Of a stretch of DNA of 64,000 nt, positions 10,803 through 33,431 are shown piece after piece. The position numbers and the translations under genes were made by a program. Location of the stretch: the IMG/VR virus record IMGVR_UViG_3300024999_000029, positions 285,051-349,050 of that record, one strand, 5' to 3'. How positions within the stretch are numbered: position 1 is the first letter of the stretch; each line of letters starts with the position of its first letter. The notes beneath the pieces were generated by a model. That model had not been told where the DNA came from, did no database searches, and saw only the letters and a program-made list of their open reading frames with translations.

Positions 10803-13800
10803 TAAATCCATAATTTCCAGAACATTTCGTATAGGCGAAGAAGGTGCTGAAGATGCAGGTAAAACAGAAGAGTATCTTAATTCTATAGGTATTGCTGTCA
10901 GAAAATCAGCTACAGAATTTAGGGATTTTTCTGGCATATTAGATGATATTAAAGGTAGATGGGGTTCTTTAACATCTACGGAAAAAAGTGCTTTAGCTCA
11001 ACAAATGGCTGGAACCTGGCATTATTCAAAATTTATTGCATTAATGGAAAATTATGGAATAGCACAAGATGCAACCAATAAAGCAATGAATAGTCAAAAT
11101 TCAGCATTACAAGAAAATGCAAAATATATGAATAGTGTTGCTGGTAAAGTTGGACTATTTAAAGTTTCGTTAGAAAATTTATATTCCACAATTTTATCAT
11201 CTGATGCTTTAAAAAATATATTAGATGGTTTAATTAAATTTATAGAAGTCACAAATAGAGTTGTGACAGGATTGGGCGGATTTAATACAGCTTTATTATT
11301 AATAATTAATACTTTAATAATATTTAAAAGTAAGGCAATTGCTAGTGCTATAACAAGTGTATGGGCATACATTGCCGCTTTCGGTTTAGCCGAAACAGCA
11401 ACACTTGGGTTTAGTGCGGCAGTTAGTGTATTAAATACTGCTTTATTAGCATTGCTTAAAAATCCTATAACATGGATACTTGCGGCAGTGGGAACATTGA
11501 CTATTGGTATTTTTTCATGGATTAATGCTAATCAAAAATTAAAAGAATCAATAATTGAAACAAATAAAGCTCAACTAGATTTTAACTTGGCTGTTAAAGA
11601 TTTTTATCAAGATATGTCACCTGATAAAGTAAATGCAACTGCACAAGCTTTTGAAAATTTAAAAAAGCAACTTAATTATAAAAATGATAATGATTTACAA
11701 GAAGATATTAATAAAATTCAAGAGTTAAGAAAAGAATCTGAATGGGCTAAAAAAGTTTTATCTGATTCTGGCCGTAGTTCATATGAAAAGAATTTAGCTC
11801 AAAAAATATTACAACAACTATCTGATTTAGAAGATAAAACTAAAAAATACACTGAAGCTCAAAAAGAATTAGATACACAAAAGGCAATTACCAACATACT
11901 AGATACAGAATCCCAGAATAATATTGCCAAAAAGGTTAAAGGGAAATTATCTGAATTAGATGCAGACAAAGAATTGATAAAACAGTATGAAAAAAGCGTT
12001 AAAGCTGGAAAAGAAGATAAAGAGATTCGTGACCAAATTTTAGATAAATATCCTCAATATCTTAAAATGATTGGTGAGCATTCAGATAAAATTGGCATTA
12101 ACACAGATACATTAAAAATTAATATAGATATTCAAGAAACTCTTGCAAAAGCTGAAATAGTAGAAGCACAAGTAGCAATGCGGGCAAGCTTAGATAAGAC
12201 AACTACAATTGTAGAACAAACTAAGCAAAGAATAACGGCGTTAAAAGAAGAGCAATCCGCACTAGTAGCTATAAGTAAACCTATTTCTGTAGCTGATGTA
12301 GAAATTTCACCAGCTACAGAAATATTTAATGATCGAATAGAAGAAAAGTTTTCTCAAATAGTTGAGGCTGAAAAGGGTTTGGAACGACTTCAGTCAGCTA
12401 TTGAAATTCAAAAAGGCTCTTTAGAATTAACTCCAGAACAAATTTTAGCTGCTGCAAAATCAGGTAAAAAAGGATATTTTTCAGATTCAGATGGAGATAA
12501 ATCTTCCTTGCCAACTCTTAAAGAAGCAGTTGCTCGTGAAGAGTTAACTAAAGAACTTGTTAAGGCTTATAATAAAGAAGTTGATATATCAGATGTTAAG
12601 ATTAAACATCTTGAGAGACAACTTAAAATAAATGACGAACAAAAAAATTATAATAGAGAGCTTGAATTAACTAATTCACTTATATCAAACCAAGAGGCTA
12701 AAATTGGTCAACTTGGGACAGCTAATAAAAGTATAACAAAAGAGGCAGATAAACTACGTGCCGATAATCTTAAATTTGACACAACCAAGTGGTTTGATGT
12801 GGGTGGAGAAGCAACAGTAGATTATAGGAAACTTCTTAATTCATTTGCTATTGAATCAGAAAAAATACGTGCCAAAGCAGAAAAAACTAATACTAAAACA
12901 GCTATTCAAGAATCAAATAAACAGATTCAGGCTTTAGAAAATCAAAAGAAAAAAATTGAGGAATTATTTAACAATATTTATGCTCTTAAAAAGGCTTATG
13001 CTTCTAATACGGACGAAATATTAAAGACTGAAGATGCAGTTGATTCATTAAAACAAAGTGTTGTTAAATTAAATGAAGAACAAAAGAAACTCCAAGAAGA
13101 ACTTTACAAAAAGCAAAAAAAATCTCTTGAAGAAATTTTAGATTTAGTCACTGAGATGATTAAGCAAGAAGCGGAAGATCAAATTGACGCACTTGAAGAA
13201 CAAGTTGATAAATATAAAGAAATAATTAGTGCAAAAAAAGAAGCATTGAAGCTTACTGAAGAACAACACGATTATGAGAAGTCTTTAGCTGAAAAACAAA
13301 AAGATATATCTAAGATTCAAAATCGTCTTTTAGAATTAAGTCTTGATGATAGTCGTGCAGCACAGGCTGAAAGACTTAAATTAGAAGAAGACTTAGCAGA
13401 TAAAACATCGGATTTAGATGAGTTGCAACATGATAGAAGTATTGAACTTCAAGAGCAAGCTTTAGATAAAGAATTAAAACAGTTTGAAGATACTAAAGAC
13501 AAAGAGATTAAAGAAATTAAAGATTATCTTGATAAATCTGGACGTTTAACTGCCGATGCTATGAAATTAATTAATACTCAAGGTGATACGGTTTATAACA
13601 ATTTAGTAAAATGGAATGAATTGTACGGAGATTCGATTGAAAATAATGTAAAAAATTCCTGGGAGAGTGCTAAACAAGCCTTAAATAGTTATAAAAACTC
13701 TTTGAATCAAATTGATTATAATTTTGCATCACAAACTCTTAGCGATACTTTAAATGAGAGCGATATTATTGCTCAAATGCAAGCAAATTCTAAGTCTTGG

Positions 13801-14244
13801 TCTAATGCTAGTCCTGAATATAAAAAAGAGCTTGCGGCAGAGAATCTTAGACTTGGAACAAGTATAGGATTAACCAGAGATGATAAGACTGGCATTTGGT
13901 ATGATAAAAGTGGAGTTAGAGCTTATGCTGGTGGTGGCACAAGTACTGAAACTCAACTTGCATTATTACATGGCACAAAAGCTAATCCAGAATGGATTCT
14001 TAATTCAGGTCAAATGAAAAGTTTGATTACTAATTTGACTTTACCTCAATTCAAGATGCCTGAAGTTAAGGGATTATCTAATGGCAGTGGGGTTCAAATT
14101 GGTAGTTTGATTACAGTAAATGGAAATGTAGATAAAGCAGCTATGCCAAAACTTGAAACTGTTGTAAATCAAGCAGTTGATAAGTTGGTTAATACGATGG
14201 GACTTAGGGGCAATACTAGGTCGACAAAATCATATAGCATTTAG
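10803..14244 (+). CDS. tail tape measure protein, exon 2
   Basis: Continues the TMP domain (RDFSGILDDI), hydrophobic segment, long coiled coil, YAGGG...LHGT...PEWIL C-terminus. Confidence 0.85.
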
Positions 14245-14335: not shown

Positions 14336-15124
14336 TTGGCTATACAGGCTTTAAATTTTATATATGACAATATTTCAAGCGAGGTATTTTCGGTCAAGAT
14401 TGTGAATTTTAACTCCAGTGGTTTACAAGAAAATAATTTTGGAGGTAACGTAATTCCGATTTATGAATCAATAAAAAGAAAACATAATGTGTTTTTGTAT
14501 GGGACTCAGCCGTCACAACCATTAGAATTTGAATTGAATATTGCAACAGAGGGAGAAGAACTTGACAGTTATTCACTAGGAGCATTGGGCAAGTGGCTCT
14601 TTGGTCATCAAGATTGGAAATGGCTACAAATTGAGCAAGTTTCATATGAAGGGTTATGGTTTAAGTGTTTATTATTAGATCCTCAAGTTATTTCAGTTGG
14701 TAATATGAATATAGGCTTTAAATGTAAGGTATTCTGTGACAGTTCATATGTATATTCTGATGAGTTTACATATAACCACAATATCACTACTTCTAATCAG
14801 CAAATTACATTTAATAATTTAAGTGATGCTAACTTGTATTTATATCCCTATATATCCTTCACAACGTCTAGTACAACTACTAGCTTCAGTATAAAAAATT
14901 CCTCAGATAGTGATAGAGAATTTAAATTTACAAGTATTGCAAATAATGAGACTATAACTGTGAATAATGATTTAAAAATTATAACGTCTAGTACATCTAA
15001 TAATAGATTGAGTAATTTTAATTTAAAGTGGTTGAGGTTAGTTCCAGGAACTAATAATTTAGTAGTTAATGGGAATGGTAGTATGTTTTTAAGAATGAGA
15101 TTCCCAGTTAAGGTTGGTGGGTAA
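14336..15124 (+). CDS. distal tail protein (Dit)
   Basis: Directly after TMP; NFIYDNISS start, WLRLVPGTNNL end. Confidence 0.75.
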   Translation: MAIQALNFIYDNISSEVFSVKIVNFNSSGLQENNFGGNVIPIYESIKRKHNVFLYGTQPSQPLEFELNIATEGEELDSYSLGALGKWLFGHQDWKWLQIEQVSYEGLWFKCLLLDPQVISVGNMNIGFKCKVFCDSSYVYSDEFTYNHNITTSNQQITFNNLSDANLYLYPYISFTTSSTTTSFSIKNSSDSDREFKFTSIANNETITVNNDLKIITSSTSNNRLSNFNLKWLRLVPGTNNLVVNGNGSMFLRMRFPVKVGG

Positions 15125-15571: not shown

Positions 15572-15976
15572 ATGTGTAAGGTCGGAGACATTATTTTAAT
15601 TAAGAATTATATAGTTAATGGTGTACATTTAACAAAACATTCTTTCGTAGTTTTAAATGATAAAGCGGGACAAATTCAAGGCTTAGATTACGATATAATA
15701 TGCAATACCATGTCTTCATTTAAAAATGAGGAGCAACGAAAGAAAAAGTTGAGTTATTCTAGTAATTTTGAGATATTACATAATGATCAAGTTATAAGTA
15801 ATGGTGGAAATGATATAGATGGCTTTATAAAAGCGGAACAATTTTATTATTTTGATAAAGATAAAATTGATTATATGGTTATTGGCACTATGAAAGCAGA
15901 AGCTTTTAATTTATTATTAGAATTTATAGATGAATTAGAAATACCAATTCAAGATGTAGTAGATAATTTAAAGTAA
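15572..15976 (+). CDS. PemK/MazF-like putative toxin
   Basis: KVGDIILI...HSFVVL...SSF...FIKAEQFY pattern of the PemK fold; canonical RP replaced by HS. Confidence 0.5.
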   Translation: MCKVGDIILIKNYIVNGVHLTKHSFVVLNDKAGQIQGLDYDIICNTMSSFKNEEQRKKKLSYSSNFEILHNDQVISNGGNDIDGFIKAEQFYYFDKDKIDYMVIGTMKAEAFNLLLEFIDELEIPIQDVVDNLK

Positions 15977-16129
15977 TTTTACTGATTTTTAAGACCTCTC
16001 TAACTAGAGGTCTTATTCATTGTAAATAACCTCCTTTTCAGTAATATTATACTTGCATAATATTTTCCATAAGATATAATAATTATATCAATATAAAAAT
16101 ATATAAATCACTGAGAAGGAGAGATAAAA

Positions 16130-17086
16130 ATGAATAAATGTACTAAATGTGGGGCTATCAACACAGATGAAACAATATATTGTGAGTGTGGTGAACCTTT
16201 GAATGACAATATTTCCGATAGAGATAATTCAATAAGCAAGGAACTGAGAAATACACTTATTTTTGGTGGAATATTCGCTATTGTTGTATTATTTATAATT
16301 ATTATTACTAATGTAAATAGTAAGTACCAACAGCCAGATCATAGCGAGCAGTCAAATGTAAGTATAGATGATAATGAAATAAAAATGAATAATTACAAAA
16401 ATGAGCTAAAAGATAAAATGTCATCTATTATTAAAAAATATGATTTTGCCACATCATTCGAACTTGATAGTGATATGGATGCTCATATGACGATAAAAGT
16501 TAATGATAAATTTGACAAATTAAGTAATGTAGAAAAGTATAAGGTATTAAGTAATTTATATCATGATTTTAAGGAAACAATAAATGAATGTATTATGGAT
16601 AAACTTGATAGCAGTTATATAGATACTGATATAGGGAAGCGTATTTTAGCCATTTCACCAAAAGGAACATTTACACAAAATTATGATCACCTAACATTGC
16701 CAGATGGGAAAGAAGTATGCGAGGACGATACACTAACAAAAGAAGAAAAAAAGCAACAACAGGAGGAAATAGAACAATTTAAAAAACAACAAAATCTTAT
16801 TGATAGTAGCGTGAATGGTTTAATTATTCAAAATGAAAAGATATGGACAAATGATGGCGATTATAGTTATTTTAAAGGAAGAGTTAAGAATATCGGCAAT
16901 TTAGACATTACATATTGGAAATTAACGCTTGAACTTTGTGATAGCAATGAAAATGTATTAGATACAGATTATACAAACTCATCGGAAACAATTAGACCTG
17001 GAAATATGAAAGAGTTTGAAATAATGCATAAATATGACTCTGAGTATAAAAAAGCAAGAGTTTTTATAGATGAAGCTAAGAACTAA
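16130..17086 (+). CDS. Zn-ribbon, single-TM, C-terminal FxLYD-like domain protein (moron)
   Basis: CTKCG...CECG, TM helix, GRVKNIG...LELCDSNENVLD...IRPG. Confidence 0.7.
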   Translation: MNKCTKCGAINTDETIYCECGEPLNDNISDRDNSISKELRNTLIFGGIFAIVVLFIIIITNVNSKYQQPDHSEQSNVSIDDNEIKMNNYKNELKDKMSSIIKKYDFATSFELDSDMDAHMTIKVNDKFDKLSNVEKYKVLSNLYHDFKETINECIMDKLDSSYIDTDIGKRILAISPKGTFTQNYDHLTLPDGKEVCEDDTLTKEEKKQQQEEIEQFKKQQNLIDSSVNGLIIQNEKIWTNDGDYSYFKGRVKNIGNLDITYWKLTLELCDSNENVLDTDYTNSSETIRPGNMKEFEIMHKYDSEYKKARVFIDEAKN

Positions 17087-17308
17087 TTATATTATTAATG
17101 TAAAAGATTTATTTAAACTGGTGATGAGCCAGTTTTCTTTTTATAAAAATCTCTAATAATTTTCACCTCAACTTTTATTAAAATATTGATAATTCTAATA
17201 TTTCTCTTGACAAATTATTAATATATTGATAATATTAATATATTAAGAAATTTTATATTGATTAATTTTATGGTATAATCAAAATAAAAATGTTAATGAG
17301 GGATATTA

Positions 17309-17545
17309 ATGGAAGTAATGATTAAATTAAAAATAAATGAAAAAATTGAAGAGTACAGAAAAGACACAGGAGCAACGAAAACTTGGATTTCTCATAAACT
17401 TGGAATGAGTAAACAAAGATTGTCCAATATCGGCAACGGGGACAATATTACTTTAAAATTATTACTAAGAGTTGCAATATTTCTAAATTGTAAAACCGAA
17501 GATTTATACGAATATAGTATTGTTGACGATAATATTCAATCTTAG
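17309..17545 (+). CDS. Cro/C1-type HTH regulator
   Basis: HTH_26-like (LGMSKQRLSNI...IAIFLNCKTEDLYEY); upstream TTGACA promoter with repeated ATATTGAT boxes. Confidence 0.8.
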   Translation: MEVMIKLKINEKIEEYRKDTGATKTWISHKLGMSKQRLSNIGNGDNITLKLLLRVAIFLNCKTEDLYEYSIVDDNIQS

Positions 17546-17651
17546 ATATTTTTGTATTTATTTTTGTTGACATTATTCAAACTCTTTTGTATACTATTAA
17601 TGCAAGGTAGATTTTACCTTTTGTAAAAAATAATATATAGGAGGGTTTATT

Positions 17652-17951
17652 GTGAGTAGATTAAAAACAATTACGATTAATGAATTTGAAAATGATTTTA
17701 GTAAATTAGAAGGAAAATCAGTTTGCGTAGATATCAAAGGGTCTATAAATTTATTGAAGGTTATAACCAACTTCAACGTATGGCAAGACGAAAATAAAAT
17801 TACATTGTTTGATCATGAAGATGAATCCGAAGTTAATATTAAAAAAGATGTTATTGATTGTATTGTAAAAGATAGACATGATACGAGTTTATTTTTAAAG
17901 AATGGTATGGAAGTTAATGTTTATGGGCAGGAGGACGTTGATCATGAATAA
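17652..17951 (+). CDS. hypothetical protein
   Basis: AGGAGG RBS; TTGACA-17-TATACT promoter at about 17567. Confidence 0.65.
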   Translation: MSRLKTITINEFENDFSKLEGKSVCVDIKGSINLLKVITNFNVWQDENKITLFDHEDESEVNIKKDVIDCIVKDRHDTSLFLKNGMEVNVYGQEDVDHE

Positions 17952-18726
17952 TTTAATGATAAAAGAAGTAAGTTTCAACGGAGATAGTTTACTGGCGGTT
18001 AAGAATAATTATGATAGTAAAATATATGTCGGAGTTAGTTATATCTGTAATGGTATAGGGTTATCTGAAGGACAGATGAAAAATGAAAGAAAGAAAATAC
18101 AGGAAGATTTAGTCCTTTCTAAAGGGGGACGAAATTTAATCCTCCCTACAAATGGTGGCAATCAAGAGGTTTTGGGTATAGAATTAGACTTCCTCCCTCT
18201 TTGGTTGGCTAAGATTTCTATCACTCCTAAAATGATAAAAGATAATCCTGATGTAGTAAGCAAACTTGTTGATTATCAATTGAAAGCAAAAGACGTTTTA
18301 GCAAAAGCATTTATATATGGAGAATACAACTTGCCAACCACATATAAAGAAGCACTAATACAATTGCTTACTGTAGTTGAGCAAAAAGAAAAGATTGAAG
18401 AACAAAACAAAGTACTTATTCCAAAGGCTGAAGGATATGATGTATTAATTGCAGCAGATGGTTATCAAAACATGAATGAGGTAGCCAAGGCATTTTCAAT
18501 TGGTCGCAATAAATTATTTAAATTACTAAGAAATGAAAAAATTCTCATGGACAACAACGTACCTTATCAAAAATACATCAACAATAATTATTTTTTAGTT
18601 AAAGAGATATCAATTAGTCGTGGCAATTACTACTATAATGGCCTGCAAACGTTTATTACAGCTAGAGGATTGGGCTTCTTAAAGGACTTGCTAAAAGAAA
18701 ACGGCTACTTGCAAAGTATAGCCTAA
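17944..18726 (+). CDS. phage antirepressor (P22 AR-N + KilAC/ANT)
   Basis: LPTNGGNQEVLGIELDFLPLWLAKI; IGRNKLFKLLR...NVPYQKYI. Confidence 0.85.
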   Translation: MNNLMIKEVSFNGDSLLAVKNNYDSKIYVGVSYICNGIGLSEGQMKNERKKIQEDLVLSKGGRNLILPTNGGNQEVLGIELDFLPLWLAKISITPKMIKDNPDVVSKLVDYQLKAKDVLAKAFIYGEYNLPTTYKEALIQLLTVVEQKEKIEEQNKVLIPKAEGYDVLIAADGYQNMNEVAKAFSIGRNKLFKLLRNEKILMDNNVPYQKYINNNYFLVKEISISRGNYYYNGLQTFITARGLGFLKDLLKENGYLQSIA

Positions 18727-18744
18727 ACAAATATCAAACAAAAG

Positions 18745-19017
18745 ATGAGATTTGACTTAGACTATATAATCAACTTATGCAGACCCAATAATATCTCCGT
18801 CAAAGTTATTGTTAATAAATACGGTGGAGATGATATACTATTAACACACAGGCGGGACACCTATAAGGTACAGCAAGAAGATGATTGCTATATTTTGCTA
18901 AAGCGAAATTGTGCTCAAAATCCAAAAAGACGTGAATATTATCATCTAGTTAAAAATGCTGGAGATAATGGTAAGTTTTATAGTTTGAAAGATTTGATTT
19001 TTGGGATAATTAAATAA
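18745..19017 (+). CDS. hypothetical protein, paralog of 663..1016
   Basis: Shared N.YG..D.L.T....TYK.Q....CY.LL.RN...N.K..E.YH motif. Confidence 0.7.
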   Translation: MRFDLDYIINLCRPNNISVKVIVNKYGGDDILLTHRRDTYKVQQEDDCYILLKRNCAQNPKRREYYHLVKNAGDNGKFYSLKDLIFGIIK

Positions 19018-19104
19018 ATATAAAATCCAAGCAAGTAGCGGATAGTTCTCTACCCGCTTTTTGTTTTTATAGTAAATTAAAATATAATTTAGAAAGGTAG
19101 AATA

Positions 19105-19434
19105 ATGGAGTTAAAAGAAAATATTTTAGGTCAATTACATATATATTACGAATCAGTAAGTAGTGACTGTAAACCTATGGCTTTTTTCCCTATTCAAGAA
19201 CGATATGTTGAAGAAATAAAAAACTATGTTTTCTCTCGGAAATTAAACATCCATATTGAACCTTTATCAGATGGTTGGTTTACTATTTATATATATAAAT
19301 ATGATTATTTAATTCATATTATAGAAAATTTGCCCCAAAAACCACAAACTCCCTATGACCATTGGGTTATAGGAAAAGCCTGTGGCTATTCAGATTCAGC
19401 TATTGGTGAGTTTATCAAGTCAAAATTTAAGTAA
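19105..19434 (+). CDS. hypothetical protein (DUF2023-like)
   Basis: LHIYYE...TPYDHWVIGKACGYS. Confidence 0.5.
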   Translation: MELKENILGQLHIYYESVSSDCKPMAFFPIQERYVEEIKNYVFSRKLNIHIEPLSDGWFTIYIYKYDYLIHIIENLPQKPQTPYDHWVIGKACGYSDSAIGEFIKSKFK

Positions 19435-19471
19435 TTATTGTGTTACAATTAGAGCATTTTTTTCAACATAC

Positions 19472-19499
19472 TTGACATATAACCATGCTATGGTATAAT
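19472..19499 (+). promoter_or_regulatory. sigA promoter, near-identical to CptIN promoter at 24963
   Basis: TTGACA-16-TATAAT with extended -10 TG. Confidence 0.8.
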
Positions 19500-19544
19500 T
19501 AAATTAAGGTAGAATAAAATATCTTATGTAGTTTATATAATATC

Positions 19545-19635
19545 TGTCGGGATGGAGACGAAAAACTCATTCTCATTGGTCGGGATGAAGACCTAAAACT
19601 CATTCCCATTGCAGAGTGAACTGCTAAAAATCAGT
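19545..19635 (+). ncRNA. tandem 33-nt pseudoknot repeats (2 full + 1 degenerate), candidate RNA antitoxin
   Basis: tgtc-gggatgga-gacg-aaaaac-tcattctc-att / ggtc-gggatgaa-gacc-taaaac-tcattccc-att / gcag-agtgaa-ctgc-taaaaa-tca; covarying stem 1 and 7-bp loop pairing. Confidence 0.7.
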
Positions 19636-19666
19636 AAAAGATGGCTTAGGTCATCTTTTTACTTTT
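19633..19666 (+). terminator. terminator between repeats and nuclease gene
   Basis: aaaagatggc-ttag-gtcatctttt followed by T-rich tail. Confidence 0.75.
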
Positions 19667-19680
19667 AATAGGAGATACAT

Positions 19681-20397
19681 ATGACAGAAGAAAAAAGTTT
19701 TAAAAAACGTGTAAAAGATGAAATTATAAATGGTGCAAAGATTTATAAGGAAAATTTTGTGGATTATGAATATCTTATATGTTCAGAAGCTTTTACTGCT
19801 AAAGAATTTTATACTATTGACGCAAAAGAAGATAATTATCAACATTTAACTGGAGTTAATTCCTTAATTGCATCAAAAGATTTTTTTAACAAGTCATATG
19901 ATAAAACTCTTCAAGAATCTGATTTTGATTTTAATAAGCGTGGGCAAAGTGAAAAATCAGTAAAAGGTTCTGTAAGAAGAAAAATTAGTGTTTTGCCTAA
20001 TATTATACATATTTTTGAGAATGGTACATTAGTAGAAGAAAATCTTATAAAAAATCAAATTAAATGTTCTTTTGCAACCACCGATAAGAAATGTACATTA
20101 GGCTTTATTGACTTGACAAAATCAAGACCTATGTCTTTACTTAAAGGTGACGAGATTGACAATACAAAAGCTAAAAACATTGACTTGCTTTTAAGGAAGC
20201 ATATATCCAAAGATAAATTTAATGAAATTATAATTGGTGATTTTGTCGCATTGCAAAAATATAGAGAAAACATAGAAGCGTTTTTAGATGAAAAAATTAT
20301 AACGGAACTAGATAAAATGAAAGTACTCTTAGTCAAACAGGAATTACAAGAAGCTCAAGAGCAAGTTGCTTCGGGCGAATATGTAAGACCTCTCTGA
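19681..20397 (+). CDS. PBECR4-like (BECR-fold) RNase, candidate toxin
   Basis: AKIYKENF...NYQHLTGV...KISVLPNI...CTLGF...PMSLLK pattern. Confidence 0.7.
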   Translation: MTEEKSFKKRVKDEIINGAKIYKENFVDYEYLICSEAFTAKEFYTIDAKEDNYQHLTGVNSLIASKDFFNKSYDKTLQESDFDFNKRGQSEKSVKGSVRRKISVLPNIIHIFENGTLVEENLIKNQIKCSFATTDKKCTLGFIDLTKSRPMSLLKGDEIDNTKAKNIDLLLRKHISKDKFNEIIIGDFVALQKYRENIEAFLDEKIITELDKMKVLLVKQELQEAQEQVASGEYVRPL

Positions 20398-20502: not shown

Positions 20503-23385
20503 ATGAATTTTACATATGATCTTTTTAATCGCATTGAAGCAATCCAAATAATTCTCTGTAAAAATAACTTAGAAAAAGTTGGTGTCTTAGGTTTAGCATA
20601 CGATAAAAAAGCAATATTGAGGCTTACGGACTTCTCGGAAATTTCTTTTACATATCCTCAAAAAGTTGATAATAAAACAACTCAATATTATAATGATATT
20701 AAAACTAAAAAAATAATTTATGTTCCAGAGTTAGGTTATTTTAGACTTGAAAAAGTAAAGATTGAATCGGATGGCATCAGGGAGGTAAAAAATTGTGTTG
20801 GTTATTCTATTCAGATAGAATTAAAAAATAAACAATTAGTTAATTTCTCAGGTACGTATAAACTATATGACAGTTTAAAACCCCAAGAAAGTTTGATGGG
20901 TATTCTTATAGATTATTTTCCAAATTGGAGTATTAATGAGGTTGATGAGAATCTTTGGAACATCTATCGTACATATGACATTTCAGAGAAGGATATCTAT
21001 TCATTTTTAATGGATGATTTAATGACCTCATTTAATTGCGTGGTACTATTTGATATTATGAATCGTAAAATAAGTGTCAAAGAATTAGGAAATGTATCTA
21101 AAGAAACTGATATATATATTAGTTTTGATAATCTTATTAAGTCAGCAGAAATTGAAGAATTGTCGGATGAAATTTGCAGTTCACTGAGGGTGAGGGGTGG
21201 ATCGGAAAGTACTGACATCAGGAGTGTAAACCCGAATGGAACTGACACTATTTATAATATAAACTATTATAAAACACTTGAGTATATGAGCCAGAGTCTA
21301 ATAGATGCTTTAAATGCATATGAAATAAAATATAATAGTAATAAGACTACATATTCAACAAAATTAACACAAATTAAAGATAAGAATACTATTTTAATAA
21401 CCAAAAATGGAGAATTAGATACACTCAATACTCAGATGGATGTGCTTGTAGCAACAAAAATGGTTAAAATACAAGGCGGTTTATCATTAACTGAAATAAA
21501 TTCTCAAATATCTTCAAAACAATCTGAGATAAATACAAAAAATAATGAGATAACGGGAATAAAAAATGAGATTGCGGTATTGCAAAGCAATCTAAATGAT
21601 ATAGTAGTTCAATTAAAATTCAGTAATAATTTTACAGTAGATCAATTAAAAGAGTTGGACAATTTTTTAATTGAATCCACATATACCGACTCAACATTTA
21701 TAGTTGTAGACAGTATGACGGAAGTGCAGAAGCAAGAGAAAATGCAAGAATTATATGATTATGCTAGTACTATATTAACACGACTGTCTCAACCAAGATT
21801 TTCTTTTAGTATTTCTAGTGCAAACTTTGTTTTTCTAAAAGAGTATGAAAGTTTTATGAAACAATTAGAATTAGGGTGTTTAATTAAAACTGAATTAAGA
21901 GAAGATTATATAGTAACACCAATTTTACTTGAAATTGAGATTGATTTTGAACAGGATGATAATTTTAATCTTCGTTTCGGGAATAGATATAAGCTGAGTG
22001 ACAACACGTTTACTCTAGCCGATATAATGAGTCAAACTACACAAAGTTCAAGCACTATAAGTTTTGAAAAGTATACTTATAAAGATTGGTATAAAAACAG
22101 TAAAGATTCGGTTAGTACGTTCATCGAAAGTGCCTTAAATGCTTCCGTAAACAATATCAAATCCTCCGATAACCAGGATATCTTAATAGATCAGCATGGC
22201 ATGCGCTGTAGACAATTCGATACAAGTACTAATGCATTTAAACCTGAACAACTTTGGATAGTCAATAACATGATCTCGATGTCTAATGATGGATTTTCTA
22301 ACACAGGTAAGATTGCAATCGGTAAAATTATAGATGATCGTTACGGAGAAATTTGGGGTATAGCCGCACCTCTATTAGCAGGAAAAATTCTTACGGGCAA
22401 CAACCTTCGCATAGAGAATTCAAAAAATAGTTTTGTACTGGATGAAAATGGTTGTGTGCTTACAGATGCAAAATTCACTCTCCAAACATCTAATGGAAAA
22501 GGCAAAATTATTTTAGACCCCACATTAGGTATAAGAATACAAGGAAATACAGGGGGTACTTTTGTAGATAAATTTTATGTAGACTCTTTGGGGAATGTGA
22601 AATTTTCAGGAGAATTGTCAGCTGCTACTGGAACTTTCAGTGGAACTGTTCAAGCAGGTAGTATTATATCAAGTACTATCACTGGAGGAACAATCTCTAT
22701 CGGTTCTAATTTTAGTGTTAATTCTAGTGGAATAATTACAGCTACAGGAGCTAATATTTCTGGTAATATAACTGCGAATGCTTTAACTGCAAATGCCACT
22801 ATACAATCTCCAATTGTTACTGGTGGAACAATAAAAACTTCAAGCAGTGGACAAAGAATTGAATTAAGTTCCAACAAACTACAAGCATTTGATTCAAATG
22901 GCATATCAAGAATAAAATTTGAGCCAGTAACTACTTCTGAAGTAAATTATTATGAATTACAATTTCAAGGACAAAGTGGTAGTCAACAAGGAAGTATATC
23001 TGGAACAGATAATCAACTTAATATTGTTGGTCATAATGCACTTGTCTTAAATGGTGGTAATGATAAGGTGTATTTTACTTCAGATGTCGATTTTCAAGGT
23101 AATATTGCTTATATTAATACGATTGAACCAGATGTTGCATTAGCTATTAATGGAATATTAGGACATACTGGTTCTAGAATAGGATTTTTTGGAGTAGATC
23201 CAGCTATACAACAAACAGCTTCATTATTAGGCGATAAATTTACAACTGAAACAGCAGACCTTACTTACGGCAGTATTGAGGTTTCCATGTTGACTCATTT
23301 AAAATCTGACGTAGGAAATTTGTATAATAAAGTTAATGGTATATTGACTAAATTGGCAGAATATGGATTATTTGAATTAGAATAA
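20503..23385 (+). CDS. large tail protein (Tal/prophage endopeptidase-like hub, coiled coil, beta-rich C-terminus)
   Basis: After Dit; DIRSVNPNGT..IYN, LSQPRFSF, GTFSGTV repeats. Confidence 0.8.
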   Translation: MNFTYDLFNRIEAIQIILCKNNLEKVGVLGLAYDKKAILRLTDFSEISFTYPQKVDNKTTQYYNDIKTKKIIYVPELGYFRLEKVKIESDGIREVKNCVGYSIQIELKNKQLVNFSGTYKLYDSLKPQESLMGILIDYFPNWSINEVDENLWNIYRTYDISEKDIYSFLMDDLMTSFNCVVLFDIMNRKISVKELGNVSKETDIYISFDNLIKSAEIEELSDEICSSLRVRGGSESTDIRSVNPNGTDTIYNINYYKTLEYMSQSLIDALNAYEIKYNSNKTTYSTKLTQIKDKNTILITKNGELDTLNTQMDVLVATKMVKIQGGLSLTEINSQISSKQSEINTKNNEITGIKNEIAVLQSNLNDIVVQLKFSNNFTVDQLKELDNFLIESTYTDSTFIVVDSMTEVQKQEKMQELYDYASTILTRLSQPRFSFSISSANFVFLKEYESFMKQLELGCLIKTELREDYIVTPILLEIEIDFEQDDNFNLRFGNRYKLSDNTFTLADIMSQTTQSSSTISFEKYTYKDWYKNSKDSVSTFIESALNASVNNIKSSDNQDILIDQHGMRCRQFDTSTNAFKPEQLWIVNNMISMSNDGFSNTGKIAIGKIIDDRYGEIWGIAAPLLAGKILTGNNLRIENSKNSFVLDENGCVLTDAKFTLQTSNGKGKIILDPTLGIRIQGNTGGTFVDKFYVDSLGNVKFSGELSAATGTFSGTVQAGSIISSTITGGTISIGSNFSVNSSGIITATGANISGNITANALTANATIQSPIVTGGTIKTSSSGQRIELSSNKLQAFDSNGISRIKFEPVTTSEVNYYELQFQGQSGSQQGSISGTDNQLNIVGHNALVLNGGNDKVYFTSDVDFQGNIAYINTIEPDVALAINGILGHTGSRIGFFGVDPAIQQTASLLGDKFTTETADLTYGSIEVSMLTHLKSDVGNLYNKVNGILTKLAEYGLFELE
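22873..23102 (+). repeat. 230-bp direct repeat A, copy 1 (copy 2 at 23620..23849)
   Basis: Identical ends (about 65 and 50 bp), diverged middle, no indels. Confidence 0.9.
23323..23376 (+). repeat. 54-bp direct repeat B, copy 1 (copy 2 at 24039..24092)
   Basis: tataataaagttaatggtatattgactaaattggcagaatatggattatttgaa exact duplicate. Confidence 0.9.
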
Positions 23386-23517
23386 GGGATATTAATTAAT
23401 ATCCCTTTATTTTCATTAATTATATTATATTTTTATTTATGAAATATTGACAAATCTACCCAATGTGGTATACTAAAAGTATAATAAAATTATATTTAAT
23501 AATATTGGAGGTATATC

Positions 23518-24033
23518 ATGAAAAAATATAAACAATTTATCATAGGACTTTTACTTGGTTCATTATTATTTTCCACACTGGGAGTATTCGCTGCCAATGA
23601 ATTAATAAATATTAAATTAAACAAACTACAAGCATTTGATTCAAATGGCATATCAAGAATAAAATTTGAGCCAGTAACTACTTCTGGAGTAAATTACTAT
23701 GAATTGCAGTTCTTTGGTCAAGGTGGGAATGAAGAAGGGATAATATCTGGAACTAATGGGAAACTTAATATTGTAGGTCGTAACAAACTTATTTTAGATG
23801 GTGGTAATGATAAGGTGTATTTTACTTCAGATGTCGATTTTCAAGGTAAGAACCTTAACTTTAGTAATGCAACGGTTAATGGATTAGACACAAATTCACA
23901 TCTTCAAAAAAATCACAATCATGGAATTAAACCAGGAACAAAATTGGCTATTACTGATGGACGAGGGAAAATTACAGGATATGTTGAATGGACTGAGGAT
24001 GGAGGTTTTACTCATTCTCATAATATAGAATAA
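23518..24033 (+). CDS. signal-peptide protein containing a copy of a tail-protein segment
   Basis: MKKYKQFIIGLLLGSLLFSTLGVFA-A signal, then about 76 aa homologous to the tail protein C-terminal region; own promoter TTGACA-16-TATACT at about 23447. Confidence 0.8.
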   Translation: MKKYKQFIIGLLLGSLLFSTLGVFAANELINIKLNKLQAFDSNGISRIKFEPVTTSGVNYYELQFFGQGGNEEGIISGTNGKLNIVGRNKLILDGGNDKVYFTSDVDFQGKNLNFSNATVNGLDTNSHLQKNHNHGIKPGTKLAITDGRGKITGYVEWTEDGGFTHSHNIE

Positions 24034-24123
24034 TTGACTATAATAAAGTTAATGGTATATTGACTAAATTGGCAGAATATGGATTATTTGAAATAGTTGA
24101 TTAATAGGGGTGTTGAATATCCC

Positions 24124-24873
24124 CTATTTTAATAATGGTAAAACATTTTGAGTATAATAATTATATGGGATATAATAATGCAGAACATCTTCAGAATCAG
24201 TATATGTTGTAAATGGTATGTTATTTATTAATATATCTCCTTCTTGTATTTTATGAATAGCTTTGGCTTTAGAAGCCGACCTCATACTCTTATCTTTTTT
24301 TATATTTTCTAATTGTGTTAAATCTTTTTTATACAAACTCAAAGTATCATTATCTTTATTTATTTTAGTGGTATATCCTACAGCAAGTTGTTTACCGCTA
24401 TATTTATCAGGCTTAACATATTGGTTATATTTACTTCCTATATACCTAGTAGGCACATACTGACCGCCATCAATATACACTATGGGTAATCCATCAGAAG
24501 TTTTCTCAACATTTTTATTACGAGATTGTTCATAAGGATTAAGTGTTTTAATATCTACTTTATCAATTTGTTCAGTTTCATAAACACCTTGAGTTACAGT
24601 AATATTCTCAGTTACACGAGCTATTTCTATATGACCGTTGGTTTGATTAAAAACAACTGGAATTTTTAAAACTTTACCAATATCTCCCAATTTCATATAG
24701 GTATAATCATTTATATTATAACCTTCAACGGCTACTTGCTCTCCATTAAAGAATATAGGATATTGATTTAGTTTGATAGTCAGTCCTAATTCATTAGTGG
24801 CAAATACTCCCAGAGTAGAAAATAATACTGAACCAATTAAAAATCCTACAGTAAATTGCTTATATTTTTTCAT
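24124..24873 (-). CDS. secreted protein with copper-amine-oxidase N-terminal-like domain
   Basis: True start 24873 (GGAGG RBS); MKKYKQFTVGFLIGSVLFSTLGVFA signal; YNINDYTYMKLGDIGKVL motif. Confidence 0.75.
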   Translation of the reverse strand: MKKYKQFTVGFLIGSVLFSTLGVFATNELGLTIKLNQYPIFFNGEQVAVEGYNINDYTYMKLGDIGKVLKIPVVFNQTNGHIEIARVTENITVTQGVYETEQIDKVDIKTLNPYEQSRNKNVEKTSDGLPIVYIDGGQYVPTRYIGSKYNQYVKPDKYSGKQLAVGYTTKINKDNDTLSLYKKDLTQLENIKKDKSMRSASKAKAIHKIQEGDILINNIPFTTYTDSEDVLHYYIPYNYYTQNVLPLLK

Positions 24874-24962
24874 AATAACCTCCAAAAATTTAATAATTAT
24901 AGTTTGTTTTATTTTCAGTATATCATACTGGTCGAATTTGTCAATATTTTTGTCGTTAAGAC

Positions 24963-24990
24963 TTGACATGGTATTATGCTATGGTATAAT
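24963..24990 (+). promoter_or_regulatory. sigA promoter of type III TA
   Basis: TTGACA-16-TATAAT, extended -10. Confidence 0.8.
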
Positions 24991-25054
24991 TAAATTAAGG
25001 ACAGAATAAAATAACTTGTAATAGGAAACCCCTTGCCTGATAGTAGGGATCTGA

Positions 25055-25175
25055 ACAAACACGCTTCACAATGTGCGGCAAAGAAACATTGTTAATACAA
25101 AAGTGCTTCACAATGTGCATTAAATTACATTGTTGATACAAACACGCTTCACAATGTGCGGCAAAGAAACATTGT
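25055..25175 (+). ncRNA. cptI: CptI-like RNA antitoxin, about 2.9 repeats of 41-42 nt
   Basis: acaaacacgcttcacaatgtgcggcaaagaaacattgt repeats; pseudoknot stems cgc/gcg (gtgc/gcat in repeat 2) and acaatgt/acattgt. Confidence 0.8.
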
Positions 25176-25204
25176 AAGAAAGCCTTTTATGGGCTTTCTT
25201 TTAT
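25176..25204 (+). terminator. terminator between CptI and toxin
   Basis: aagaaagcc-loop-ggctttctt + T tract. Confidence 0.8.
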
Positions 25205-25215
25205 ATGAGGTACAA

Positions 25216-25743
25216 ATGAAAAAGAATGCCATATATTTTGGAAATAAAGACATATATCAAAAAATTAGAAATGCTGGTGGAGTATGGAATGATTCTAAAG
25301 ATAGACCTATTGTATGCTTGCTAGAATCAACAGAAACAATAGGCTTGTATTGGGCTATTCCAGTGGGGAATTGGGAGCATCGAGATCAGACAGCTAAAAA
25401 TAGAATTGAGAAATATGTGTCTTACCCAAAATCAGATTTAAGGTCGTGTTACTATCATGTCGGCAAGACTAATGAAAAATCAATTTTCTTTATAAGTGAT
25501 GTTATCCCTATAGCTAAAAAATACATAGATAGAGAATATAAAGGGTTTGACAAAAAGTTGTATGTAATTAAAAATAAAAAACTCATACAATCTTTAGAAG
25601 AAAAATTAACAAGGATTTTAGCTTTTGAAGCTACAAATAATAATTATTTTAGACAACGTATTACTGATGTTAAACATGTGTTGATTGAAGAATTAGAACT
25701 AGAAAATACATTCGGAAAAGTTGCACCAATCAAAGAGGAATAA
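25216..25743 (+). CDS. cptN: type III TA toxin, CptN family
   Basis: RPIVC...GLYWAIP...FFISDVIPI.KKYIDREY; GAGGT RBS before ATG 25216. Confidence 0.75.
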   Translation: MKKNAIYFGNKDIYQKIRNAGGVWNDSKDRPIVCLLESTETIGLYWAIPVGNWEHRDQTAKNRIEKYVSYPKSDLRSCYYHVGKTNEKSIFFISDVIPIAKKYIDREYKGFDKKLYVIKNKKLIQSLEEKLTRILAFEATNNNYFRQRITDVKHVLIEELELENTFGKVAPIKEE

Positions 25744-32288: not shown

Positions 32289-33431
32289 ATGATAAAAGGA
32301 TTTAAAACAAAAATATATCCAAATCAAGAACAAAAAGAAAAAATAATTAAATTTTGTAATGCCAGTAGATTTTCATATAATTGGAGTTTAAATGTTGAAA
32401 GCGACAATTATGAACAAGGAAATAAATTTCTTAGTGGATATGATTTAGCTAAAATATTTACACAATTTAGGAATCAAGAAGGAAATGAATGGTTGAAAGA
32501 AATTCCTGCTTGCACTACTAAGATAGCAATATTTAATTGTGCAGAATCATTTAAAAATTTCTTTGAAAAACGTGCAAAATATCCTAAATTTAAATCTAAA
32601 AAACATAGCAAAATGAAATGTGCTACTAGATATGACAGGATGACTATTGAAGAAAAAAGAATAAAGTTAGAAAAATTAGGATGGATAAGAACAGTAAAAG
32701 GTAGGATACCTGTAGGAAATGATATAAAATATTCTAATCCTGCACTAGAGTACGATGGAATAGATTTCTGGTTTTCTGTAGGGGTTGAAATTATTGATAA
32801 TCAAGATAATGACAAACCTAAAACTGAAGCAATAGGAATTGACTTAGGTATAAAGCAATTAGGTACTTGCTCAAATGAAATGAAGTTAGATAAACCAGAT
32901 ATTAAGAAACAAAAAAAGAAACTTAAAAGACTTCAAAAGCAAGCAAGTAGACATTACCAAAAAATGATTGAGGAAAGCAAACGAACGAAAATCAAGTTTT
33001 CTCAGATTCCTAAATCAAAGAACCTACTTAAACTTGAAAAAGAAATTAAAAAACTACATATAAGAATTAATAATACGCTCACTACAAATATACATGAATT
33101 CACAACAAAACTTATTAAGTTAAATCCAGAAGCAATAGTAATTGAGGATTTAAATGTAATTGGAATGATGAAAAACAAGCATTTATCAGAAAAAGTTAAA
33201 GAAGCAAAATTCTATGAGATACGTAGACAATTAGAATATAAAAGCAAATGGAACAATGTTAATTTAATACTGGCTGATAGGTGGTATGCAAGTAGTAAAA
33301 TATGTAGTGAGTGTGGAAACAAAAAAGATAAATTAAGTTTGAGTGAAAGAATATATATTTGTGAAGAATGTAGCTGTATTATAGATAGAGATATGAATGC
33401 TGCATTAAATTTAAAGAAATTAGCTATATAA
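32289..33431 (+). CDS. tnpB: RNA-guided endonuclease TnpB
   Basis: HTH N-terminus, RuvC D (GIDLG), E (IEDL), D (DRDMNAA), Zn finger CSECG..CEEC. Confidence 0.92.
   Translation: MIKGFKTKIYPNQEQKEKIIKFCNASRFSYNWSLNVESDNYEQGNKFLSGYDLAKIFTQFRNQEGNEWLKEIPACTTKIAIFNCAESFKNFFEKRAKYPKFKSKKHSKMKCATRYDRMTIEEKRIKLEKLGWIRTVKGRIPVGNDIKYSNPALEYDGIDFWFSVGVEIIDNQDNDKPKTEAIGIDLGIKQLGTCSNEMKLDKPDIKKQKKKLKRLQKQASRHYQKMIEESKRTKIKFSQIPKSKNLLKLEKEIKKLHIRINNTLTTNIHEFTTKLIKLNPEAIVIEDLNVIGMMKNKHLSEKVKEAKFYEIRRQLEYKSKWNNVNLILADRWYASSKICSECGNKKDKLSLSERIYICEECSCIIDRDMNAALNLKKLAI

What the first reader, a model, noticed from the sequence alone, without database searches (positions are those of the whole stretch)
22873..24125. 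Signal-peptide-fused copy of the tail-protein C-terminal region: exported decoy or swappable tail-tip cassette
Seen: 23518..24033 has its own sigA promoter and a Sec-type signal peptide. This is fused in frame to a 230-bp copy of tail gene 22873..23102 (identical ends, diverged middle), then to a different His-rich C-terminus (HNHG...HSHNIE). After its stop, 54 bp of the tail gene's 3' end recur (24039..24092), followed by a similar terminator. Inference (a): the lysogen exports a tail-domain mimic that occupies receptors or poisons incoming tails (superinfection exclusion). Inference (b): repeats A and B bracket an alternative C-terminus that can recombine into the tail gene and switch host range.
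Basis: partly seen in the sequence, partly recalled or inferred. Interest (0 to 1): 0.75.

Follow-up and report, generated by a model that had tools for sequence, protein, structure and literature searches.

The report
Signal-peptide-fused orphan phage tail tip
Next to its tail-tip gene, a large groundwater phage carries a spare, different tail-tip ending that has been welded to a copied promoter and export signal, so it is probably made as a free, exported three-chain tail tip; this is a real and unusual gene fusion, but what it does has not been tested.

Summary

**What ORF171 (23518..24033) is.** It is a three-part chimera:
- Its promoter, ribosome-binding site and first 34 codons (a Sec-type signal peptide) are an inverted, diverged copy of the 5' end of the convergent neighbour gene (24124..24873, minus strand).
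- Codons 35-111 copy a tail-gene domain (repeat A).
- Codons 112-171 form a two-HxH ending. In related phages this is the natural extreme C-terminus of full-length tail proteins and short fibres.

**History of the locus.**
- The 58 nt after the stop (repeat B') continue into the remnant of an older tail-gene end, contiguous with the neighbour gene exactly as in the closest relative, which lacks ORF171.
- Identity between repeats A and A' is mosaic: 67 and 52 nt are identical, around 111 nt with dS 0.87.
- One natural variant contig carries short patches from two co-occurring phage lineages, so this locus recombines.

**What was not found.**
- No tail allele carrying the HxH ending, though the data could hardly have shown one.
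- No RNA evidence.
- No other signal-peptide fusion among about 50 homologues.

**Other results.** The mature part is predicted to form a homotrimer.

**Best reading.** A displaced tail tip was captured as an exported moron, possibly a receptor blocker. The decoy function and programmed switching remain inferences.

The parts
20503..23385 (+). Tal-like (YomG-type) tail-tip protein gene, 960 aa
   Evidence: phrog_6211 minor tail protein, E 1.9e-64. Full-length homologues at 35-43% identity, several carrying YOMG_N or Prophage_tail domains. It lies after the tape-measure and Dit genes.
22873..23102 (+). Repeat A: tail codons 791-867, the last beta-rich fibre domain
   Evidence: The same domain type ends many fibre proteins. 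A relative in run X5 is identical up to 22869 and then has nothing at 90% identity or better.
23103..23385 (+). C-terminal module 1 (IGFFG...QQ motif followed by a long terminal helix)
   Evidence: Shared with P0002, P0003, P0005 and P0045. About 80-85% DNA identity to L016 and L026. The structure model has low confidence except for the terminal helix.
23323..23380 (+). Repeat B: the last 19 codons of the tail gene
   Evidence: 57 of 58 nt identical to 24039-24096.
23384..23407 (+). Terminator 1, L026-like
   Evidence: 10-bp stem followed by a T run. It aligns with the terminator of locus L026.
23442..23604 (+). Left arm of the inverted repeat: promoter 23447-23474, GGAGG 23507-23511, signal-peptide codons 23518-23592 and a short linker
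   Evidence: 163 nt, 76% complementary to 24787-24949. The hexamers, the TG extension and GGAGG are identical in both arms while the spacer has diverged. Signal-peptide dN/dS is 0.20.
23518..24033 (+). ORF171, the chimeric gene: signal peptide, then domain A', then the HxH tip
23620..23849 (+). Repeat A': ORF171 codons 35-111
   Evidence: 87% identical to A. The central 111 nt are 72% identical, with dS 0.87 and dN/dS 0.28.
23850..24033 (+). C-terminal module 2: NFSNATVNGL, then HNHG, then GGFTHSH (two HxH motifs)
   Evidence: This is the extreme C-terminus of P0008, P0027, P0057 and more than 20 fibre proteins. H133, N134, H135 and G140 are nearly invariant and H166 is invariant.
24039..24104 (+). 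Repeat B' plus 8 nt: untranslated remnant of an older tail-gene end (...YGLFEIVD, stop)
   Evidence: Contiguous with terminator 2 and the 249-aa gene, exactly as in relative L016 (L016:3403-4237 matches window 24039-24884 at 90%). It is out of frame with ORF171.
24107..24123 (.). Terminator 2, L016-like, shared by the two convergent genes
24124..24873 (-). Convergent 249-aa secreted-protein gene that donated the promoter and signal-peptide type; its own promoter is at 24944-24917
   Evidence: Weak Cu_amine_oxidN1 match (18 bits, cut-off 24.2). Homologues P0047, P0067 and P0053. A paralogue lies at G000:128943-129560. Promoter.

Best explanation
ORF171 is a chimeric moron. An alternative tail-tip ending (fibre domain A' plus a two-HxH tip) was left behind by C-terminal module exchange in the Tal-like tail gene. 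It became fused in frame to a duplicated promoter, ribosome-binding site and Sec signal peptide of the neighbouring secreted-protein family.

What is shown:
- the three-part origin;
- that the module is a natural tail or fibre ending in other phages;
- that the gene is absent from the closest relatives;
- that the locus has recombined repeatedly.

What is inferred, with about 0.6 confidence: the host RNA polymerase transcribes the gene, and the product is exported, cut after VFA, and folds outside the cell into a metal-clamped homotrimer like a free fibre tip.

What is inferred, with about 0.3 confidence: the free tip occupies the surface ligand that HxH-tipped phages use. It would then work as receptor masking, that is, superinfection exclusion against relatives that still carry the old tip.

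Its 52-67-nt perfect homology blocks also leave it able to recombine back into the tail gene. I regard that as a side property rather than the function under selection.
For: **Origin**
- The inverted repeat 23442-23604 / 24787-24949 and the alignment of both 5' ends.
- A third paralogue with the same signal peptide at 129 kb.
- A/A' and B/B' repeats.
- The B' remnant and terminator 2 are contiguous with the 249-aa gene, as in L016, where the tail gene abuts that gene with no ORF171.
- L026, L025 and L028 also lack ORF171.

**A natural tail ending**
- P0008, P0057, P0027, P0056 and many short fibres end with the same domain plus HxH module.
- HxH motifs form six-histidine iron sites in trimeric fibres and spikes (PMC6116203, read).

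**Expression signals intact**
- Promoter scores 11 of 12 with a TG extension.
- The promoter hexamers and GGAGG are identical in both diverged copies.
- Signal-peptide dN/dS is 0.20.
- A terminator is present.

**Foldable**
- AlphaFold2 mean pLDDT is 85.5.
- Three copies of residues 27-171 scored 0.90 against a best control of 0.11 (three controls). That mark was reached by 21 of 30 proteins solved as pairs of one chain and by 0 of 23 solved as single chains. The calibration used two copies, not three.

**Recombination at the locus**
- Mosaic identity between A and A'.
- B and B' are 98% identical, whereas the relatives' B differs by 5-9 nt and the two terminators come from different lineages.
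- Variant contig L012 carries an L026-identical patch at 23251-23310 and an L016-type patch at 24700-24751 around an unchanged ORF171.
Against: - No transcript data exist. The only metatranscriptomes from these samples are tiny and hold none of the sequence.
- No other signal-peptide-fused fibre tip was found among 35 hits in 1.8 billion representative proteins, nor among 13 hits in a profile search. The fusion is a single-lineage event with no conservation test after the fusion.
- The purifying-selection signals (dN/dS, conserved promoter hexamers) may all date from before the fusion.
- All contigs carrying ORF171 come from one phage population.
- The host, the receptor and the binding role of the HxH tip are unknown.
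- Fold searches gave nothing significant.
- The signal peptide was judged by eye only.
Confidence: 0.45

Rival explanations
1. Spare cassette. The function under selection is host-range change. Homologous recombination across repeat A (or A together with B) moves the HxH ending into the tail gene, and the promoter and signal peptide are incidental.
For: - Perfect homology blocks of 67, 52 and 57 nt bracket the alternative ending, in the same orientation and frame.
- The non-coding B' stays 98% identical to B although the relatives' B has diverged.
- The HxH ending is used by real tail proteins.
- Patch recombination is seen at this locus in nature.
- There is an architectural parallel in orphan Rhs toxin tips, which recombine into the main gene (PMC3967940, listed).
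Against: - No recombinant allele appeared in 19 contigs, 4 runs or a junction-pattern scan. These tests were weak.
- There is only one cassette.
- A single crossover between direct repeats is an irreversible 747-bp deletion.
- No dedicated recombinase lies nearby. The nearest is a large serine recombinase about 12 kb away, and there is no reverse transcriptase.
- A silent cassette needs no strong promoter, ribosome-binding site or signal peptide, yet all three are intact here.
Confidence: 0.2
2. Neutral debris. ORF171 is a recent, accidental by-product of illegitimate and homologous recombination in a hotspot. It may be transcribed, but it has no selected function and will decay.
For: - The fusion is unique to one population.
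- The region between the Tal gene and the conserved downstream tail genes is an insertion island. Other mobile genes lie elsewhere in the tail-to-lysis gene block.
- The identical repeat ends are compatible with a very recent event.
- All selection signals could date from before the fusion.
Against: - The frame is kept at the junction.
- The first beta-strand of the domain is replaced by a similar I-x-L strand from the donor gene and is modelled confidently.
- There are no stops or frameshifts.
- All family-conserved residues of both domains are kept.
- The promoter and signal-peptide copy has diverged 20-24% from its source, while its functional elements are intact.
Confidence: 0.3
3. Assembly artefact or strain chimera: the duplicated segments were joined wrongly.
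For: Repeats break the k=31 Logan unitigs at every shared stretch.
Against: The same layout appears on 19 contigs from different samples and assemblers (k127, k141, JGI and others). The longest exact shared stretches (67 nt) are shorter than those k values. Unitig depths of the ORF171-specific pieces match the flanks.
Confidence: 0.02

Closest known systems
Morons of temperate phages (promoter-gene-terminator units inserted between late genes; Hendrix and co-workers, from my own knowledge)
   Same: ORF171 has its own near-consensus host-type promoter and its own terminator. It is inserted between conserved tail genes and is absent from relatives at that position.
   Different: Its coding part is not foreign cargo. 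It is a piece of the phage's own kind of tail protein joined to a signal peptide.
Orphan (displaced) C-terminal modules downstream of rhs and cdiA genes (PMC3967940)
   Same: An alternative C-terminal ending lies downstream in the same orientation. It keeps a stretch homologous to the main gene, so that one crossover fuses it in frame and deletes what lies between. A remnant of a still older ending (B') is left behind.
   Different: Orphan toxin tips lack their own start and are silent until recombined; this one has a promoter, start codon and export signal. It is a phage fibre tip, not a toxin, and has no immunity gene.
Invertible tail-fibre segments (Mu Gin, P1 Cin) and diversity-generating retroelements (BPP-1 Mtd); from my own knowledge
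   Same: All provide an alternative C-terminal end for a tail fibre, encoded next to the fibre gene.
   Different: The repeats here are direct, not inverted, and there is no adjacent invertase. There is no reverse transcriptase in the record, and the mismatches are not adenine-specific.
T5 Llp, a phage-encoded exported receptor blocker that binds the phage's receptor FhuA (PMC9586334)
   Same: A small exported protein that could block a surface receptor and so exclude further infection. It is encoded beside the receptor-binding tail gene with its own promoter; that Llp's gene also lies next to the T5 receptor-binding gene is from my own knowledge.
   Different: Llp is a lipoprotein unrelated to the tail protein. 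ORF171 has no lipobox, is itself a copy of a tail tip, and its binding is untested.
HxH metal-binding fibre and spike tips (T4 gp37, R-pyocin fibres, P2 gpV; PMC6116203)
   Same: Two conserved HxH motifs and a predicted intertwined homotrimer.
   Different: There is no detectable sequence or fold match to the solved examples. Metal binding is untested.

Membership tests
Moron | Own promoter and own terminator flanking a single ORF | tested here: met
   Promoter at 23447-23474, 11 of 12 with TG extension; hairpin followed by a T run at 24107-24123. These are consensus matches only.
Moron | Absent from the same position in related phages | tested here: met
   In L016 the tail gene abuts the convergent gene. 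L026, L025 and L028 also lack it.
Moron | Expressed independently of the late operon (for example from the prophage) | not testable with these tools
   No RNA run holds the stretch.
Orphan C-terminal cassette (rhs/cdiA type) | Lies downstream in the same orientation and shares a homologous stretch with the main gene just before the variable end; the fusion would be in frame | tested here: met
   A and A' are 230 nt, and both start at codon position 1.
Orphan C-terminal cassette (rhs/cdiA type) | Silent: no start or promoter of its own | tested here: not met
   It has a promoter, GGAGG, an ATG and a signal peptide.
Orphan C-terminal cassette (rhs/cdiA type) | Recombinant main-gene alleles carrying the orphan end exist | tested here: inconclusive
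   None in 19 contigs, 4 runs or the junction scan. The scanned collection held only the window's own record, and contigs hide rare variants.
Invertible fibre segment (Gin/Cin type) | Inverted repeats flank the alternative 3' ends, and an invertase gene is adjacent | tested here: not met
   The fibre repeats are direct. The only inverted repeat joins the two promoter and signal-peptide copies. Resolvase-family genes lie at window 36026-37822 and at 148 kb only.
Diversity-generating retroelement | Reverse transcriptase present, and template/variable repeats differ at adenines | tested here: not met
   No RVT_1 match in the 349-kb record. Of 31 mismatches, 13 have A in one copy and 8 have A in the other.
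HxH metal-binding trimeric fibre tip | Conserved HxH motifs | tested here: met
   H133 and H135 are nearly invariant and H166 is invariant across 19 sequences. The second motif reads HxH in most.
HxH metal-binding trimeric fibre tip | Homotrimer | tested here: met
   Prediction only: score 0.90 against a best control of 0.11 (three controls). The mark was reached by 21 of 30 solved one-chain pairs and 0 of 23 single chains; the calibration used two copies.
HxH metal-binding trimeric fibre tip | Bound iron or zinc on the three-fold axis | not testable with these tools
   Needs purified protein.
Sec (type I) signal peptide | Positive n-region, hydrophobic h-region, small residues at positions -3 and -1 | tested here: met
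   KKYK, then a 17-residue hydrophobic core, then V-F-A. Judged by inspection; no predictor was available. The same leader heads three secreted-type paralogues.
Receptor-masking exclusion protein (T5 Llp-like) | Binds the phage receptor and lowers adsorption | not testable with these tools
   Host and receptor are unknown.
Receptor-masking exclusion protein (T5 Llp-like) | Lipoprotein (lipobox cysteine) | tested here: not met
   ORF171 contains no cysteine.
YomG/Tal-type tail-tip protein (the 960-aa gene) | Family match, and position after the tape-measure and Dit genes | tested here: met
   phrog_6211 at 1.9e-64. The gene itself has no Pfam hit, but its homologue P0002 carries YOMG_N. Gene order.

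The most novel reading that the evidence does not exclude
After swapping its tail tip, the phage recycled the displaced old tip as a secreted, trimeric receptor blocker that shuts out relatives still using that tip. The perfect homology arms keep the same gene available as a spare tip. This would be a new class of superinfection exclusion, built from the receptor-binding module itself.
Probability: 0.25. Interest if true: 0.8.

Novelty: new variant of a known kind. Interest (0 to 1): 0.5.

Why it matters
If the exported tip binds the cell surface, this would be a simple, evolvable route to exclusion proteins: any displaced receptor-binding module plus a signal peptide. It would also be a ready-made probe for finding the unknown host of an uncultured groundwater phage.

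Even if the gene has no function, the locus is a clear record of how tail-tip modules are exchanged. It preserves a remnant of an older ending, two terminators from two lineages, conversion patches of about 60-110 nt, and a natural patch-recombinant in the same samples.

Tried and rejected
- **Phage GenBank collection.** No DNA or protein match.
- **Pfam and PHROGs.** Nothing for ORF171 or for either C-terminal module, even at E up to 1.
- **Profile search of solved structures.** Only chance-level hits, with E 0.08 or worse, all to one unrelated clostridial protease chain. I treat these as compositional noise and did not pursue them.
- **Fold searches with the confident monomer model.** Foldseek against PDB and BFVD gave nothing at E 0.001 or better. 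The ESM Atlas gave only sub-threshold fibre-like leads.
- **Structure of the tail's own ending.** Mean pLDDT 54; only the terminal helix is usable, so I did not search with it.
- **Diversity-generating retroelement or invertase switching.** Rejected.
- **Recombinant junction pattern** (tail-specific 23 nt, 230 N, tip-specific 26 nt).
  - Zero hits in metagenome contigs.
  - A control pattern showed that this collection holds only the window's own record.
  - Viral contigs gave no hit even for the control.
  - The null therefore carries little weight.
- **Logan contigs of 4 runs.** They break at every shared 31-mer and cannot link tail to tip. The zero depth beyond 25181 in that output is a filter effect, because contigs L005 and L007 are identical to the window there.
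- **RNA.** None of the listed runs holds the stretch.
- **Inversion between the two promoter and signal-peptide arms.** I considered this, but it would only swap leaders between the two genes, so it explains nothing.

Full report
**Where the window comes from.** The window is the last 64 kb of a 349,050-bp IMG/VR virus record (G000:C1:285051-349050) assembled from groundwater metagenomes. Around the finding lies a siphovirus-type tail module:
- a tape-measure gene, split in two;
- a Dit gene at 14336-15124;
- a Tal-like, YomG-type tail-tip gene of 960 aa at 20503-23385;
- a Gp80-like gene, a 674-aa fibre gene and an endolysin gene.

**Checking the observation.**
- ORF 23518..24033 is intact and 171 codons long.
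- It is preceded by TTGACA-16 nt-TATACT with a TG extension at 23447-23474 and by GGAGG 6 nt before the ATG.
- Residues 1-25 read as a Sec signal peptide (KKYK, a hydrophobic core, V-F-A). This is by inspection; no predictor was available.
- Repeat A (22873-23102) recurs at 23620-23849 with 87% identity. Repeat B (23323-23380) recurs at 24039-24096 with 57 of 58 matches. Within the whole 349-kb record these are the only copies (E 9e-76 and 5e-23).
- All 31 A/A' mismatches fall in the central 111 nt, with 67 and 52 nt identical on either side. If mismatches were spread evenly, P would be about 1.6e-10.
- The exact 171-aa protein occurs on 19 contigs from several samples and assemblers, always in the same layout. 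The ten contigs compared are 98.9-100% identical to the window. The layout is therefore not an assembly artefact.

The promoter, ribosome-binding site and signal-peptide codons (23442-23604) form one arm of a 163-nt inverted repeat. The other arm (24787-24949) is the 5' end of the convergent 249-aa gene at 24124-24873.
- Aligned, the two copies share the -35 and -10 hexamers, the TG and GGAGG exactly, while the spacer and leader have diverged.
- The signal peptides differ at 6 of 29 residues, all of them conservative changes, with dN/dS 0.20.
- The similarity runs through codon 34 (...NEL-x-IKLN). ORF171 then switches to the tail-gene sequence.
- A third paralogue with the same leader lies at 128943-129560 of the record.
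- These paralogues and their homologues P0047, P0067 and P0053 carry a weak copper-amine-oxidase-N-terminal-like domain. In my experience that domain is typical of secreted Firmicute proteins.
- ORF171 is therefore a three-part chimera.

**The ending is a real tail ending.** A search of 1.8 billion representative proteins, plus a profile search, found the A'-plus-HxH module at the extreme C-terminus of two kinds of protein:
- full-length Tal homologues (P0057 of 916 aa and P0008 of 920 aa; also P0027 and P0056);
- many short fibres of about 205-280 aa that begin with a conserved anchor.

In the alignments, H133, N134, H135 and G140 are nearly invariant and H166 is invariant. HxH motifs build six-histidine iron sites on the axis of trimeric fibres and spikes (PMC6116203).

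The tail gene's present ending (IGFFG...QQ, then a long helix that ends in repeat B) is another recurrent module, found in P0002, P0003, P0005 and P0045. P0045 shows that the same short-fibre family can end either way. None of the roughly 50 homologues has a signal peptide.

**Relatives and history.**
- *Closest relative (L016, 4,963 bp).* Its tail gene (P0002) ends in module 1 and is followed at once by the convergent secreted-protein gene (P0047), with no ORF171. L016:3403-4237 aligns in one block, at 90%, with window 24039-24884.
- *B' is a remnant.* B' continues as ...YGLFEIVD-stop, matching L016's ...YGLFDIVDE-stop. B', terminator 2 and the 249-aa gene are thus the remnant of an older tail-gene end.
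- *Two terminator lineages.* The terminator after the present tail gene resembles that of a different phage from the same sample (L026). There, a 577-aa fibre with module 1 (81% amino-acid identity) again faces a secreted-protein gene.
- *B and B' have been homogenised or recently copied.* They are 98% identical to each other, while the B of each relative differs by 5-9 nt.
- *The centre of A/A' is old.* It has dS 0.87 with dN/dS 0.28. It therefore comes from a long-diverged functional homologue, whereas the flanks have dS 0.
- *Recombination is seen directly.* Variant contig L012 carries a patch identical to L026 at 23251-23310 and an L016-type patch at 24700-24751, around an otherwise unchanged ORF171 locus.
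- *A natural module boundary.* A relative in another study (run X5) is identical up to 22869, four bases before repeat A, and then has nothing alike until 24836.
- *An inserted island.* More distant relatives (L025, L028) run from the Tal gene straight into the conserved downstream genes. ORF171, the 249-aa gene and the 195-aa gene at 25156-25743 are therefore an inserted island.

Taken together, the locus is a recombination hotspot with at least three separate joints, and ORF171 carries a displaced tail ending.

**Is it a working gene?**

In favour:
- expression and export signals are intact;
- the fusion is in frame, and the donor's I-x-L strand replaces the first strand of the fibre domain;
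- all family-conserved residues are kept;
- the AlphaFold2 model has mean pLDDT 85.5;
- three copies of residues 27-171 scored 0.90 against a best control of 0.11 (three controls). That mark was reached by 21 of 30 proteins solved as pairs of one chain and by 0 of 23 solved as single chains. The calibration used two copies, not three.

Against, or missing:
- there are no RNA data;
- no second lineage carries the fusion;
- the selection signals may date from before the fusion.

**Is it a switch?**
- A crossover in repeat A would give an in-frame 927-aa tail protein with the HxH tip and delete 747 bp. A double event across A and B would replace only the ending.
- I found no such allele. However, unitigs break at the repeats, assemblies hide rare variants, and the scanned collection held only the window's own record.
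- There is no reverse transcriptase, no adenine bias and no adjacent invertase.

**Verdict.** The anatomy is best described as a displaced tail tip captured by a duplicated promoter and signal peptide: a chimeric moron.
- I put about 0.6 on it being made and exported as a trimer.
- I put about 0.3 on receptor masking as its role.
- I put about 0.2 on tip switching being the selected function.
- I put about 0.3 on it being neutral debris.

The architecture resembles orphan rhs/cdiA tips (PMC3967940) and the idea resembles T5 Llp (PMC9586334), but it belongs to neither family. It is a new variant of known kinds and is moderately interesting. Its main weaknesses are that it rests on a single lineage and that nothing has been tested experimentally.

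Noticed in passing
window 8007-14244: The tape-measure gene is in two pieces (8007-9611 and 10786-14244, matching consecutive parts of phrog_4211). An HNH or homing-endonuclease ORF (9752-10651) separates them, which suggests an intron or a mobile insertion in the tape-measure gene.
   Followed up: no
window 25055-25175: Three copies of a 38-nt unit, spaced 41-42 nt apart. Copies 1 and 3 are identical, and each contains a CACAATGTG...ACATTGT palindrome. They sit just downstream of a perfect 12-of-12 promoter (24963-24990) that faces away from the 249-aa gene's promoter, and they overlap the start of the 195-aa ORF (25156). They look like operator sites.
   Followed up: partly
G000:C1:111000-129560 (outside the window): The same 349-kb record holds a second, diverged tail module: tape measure, Dit, a Tal-like gene at 124023-126089 and a fibre gene at 127387-128946. 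It too ends against a convergent secreted-protein paralogue (128943-129560). The record also has five tyrosine-recombinase matches (four above the family cut-off) and two large serine-recombinase genes. It may therefore be a composite of phage-like elements rather than one simple jumbo phage.
   Followed up: partly
window 24124-24873; L016:3489-4226; L026:6761-7459; G000:C1:128943-129560: In four of four loci of this phage group, the last tail-fibre gene is followed by a convergent gene for a signal-peptide protein with a weak copper-amine-oxidase-N-like domain. The two more distant relatives lack it. The linkage recalls receptor-binding gene plus exclusion gene pairs, but this is untested.
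   Followed up: partly
L012 (window 23240-25063): A natural variant contig carries an L026-identical patch (23251-23310) and an L016-type patch (24700-24751) in an otherwise identical sequence. This points to short-tract exchange among three co-occurring phage lineages.
   Followed up: yes
window 15572-20397: Between the Dit and Tal genes lies an island of non-structural genes: an anti-repressor (17902-18726), a PBECR4-type nuclease (19681-20397) and small ORFs. In L026 a similar island appears to split the Tal gene into a 702-aa part and a 577-aa part.
   Followed up: no
window 6897-7901, 32289-33431, 36026-37822: A tyrosine recombinase gene lies just upstream of the tape-measure gene, a transposase gene lies between the fibre and lysis genes, and a large serine recombinase gene lies just after the lysis genes.
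   Followed up: no
window 51827-53404: An NrdD-like anaerobic ribonucleotide reductase gene, consistent with an anaerobic host.
   Followed up: no
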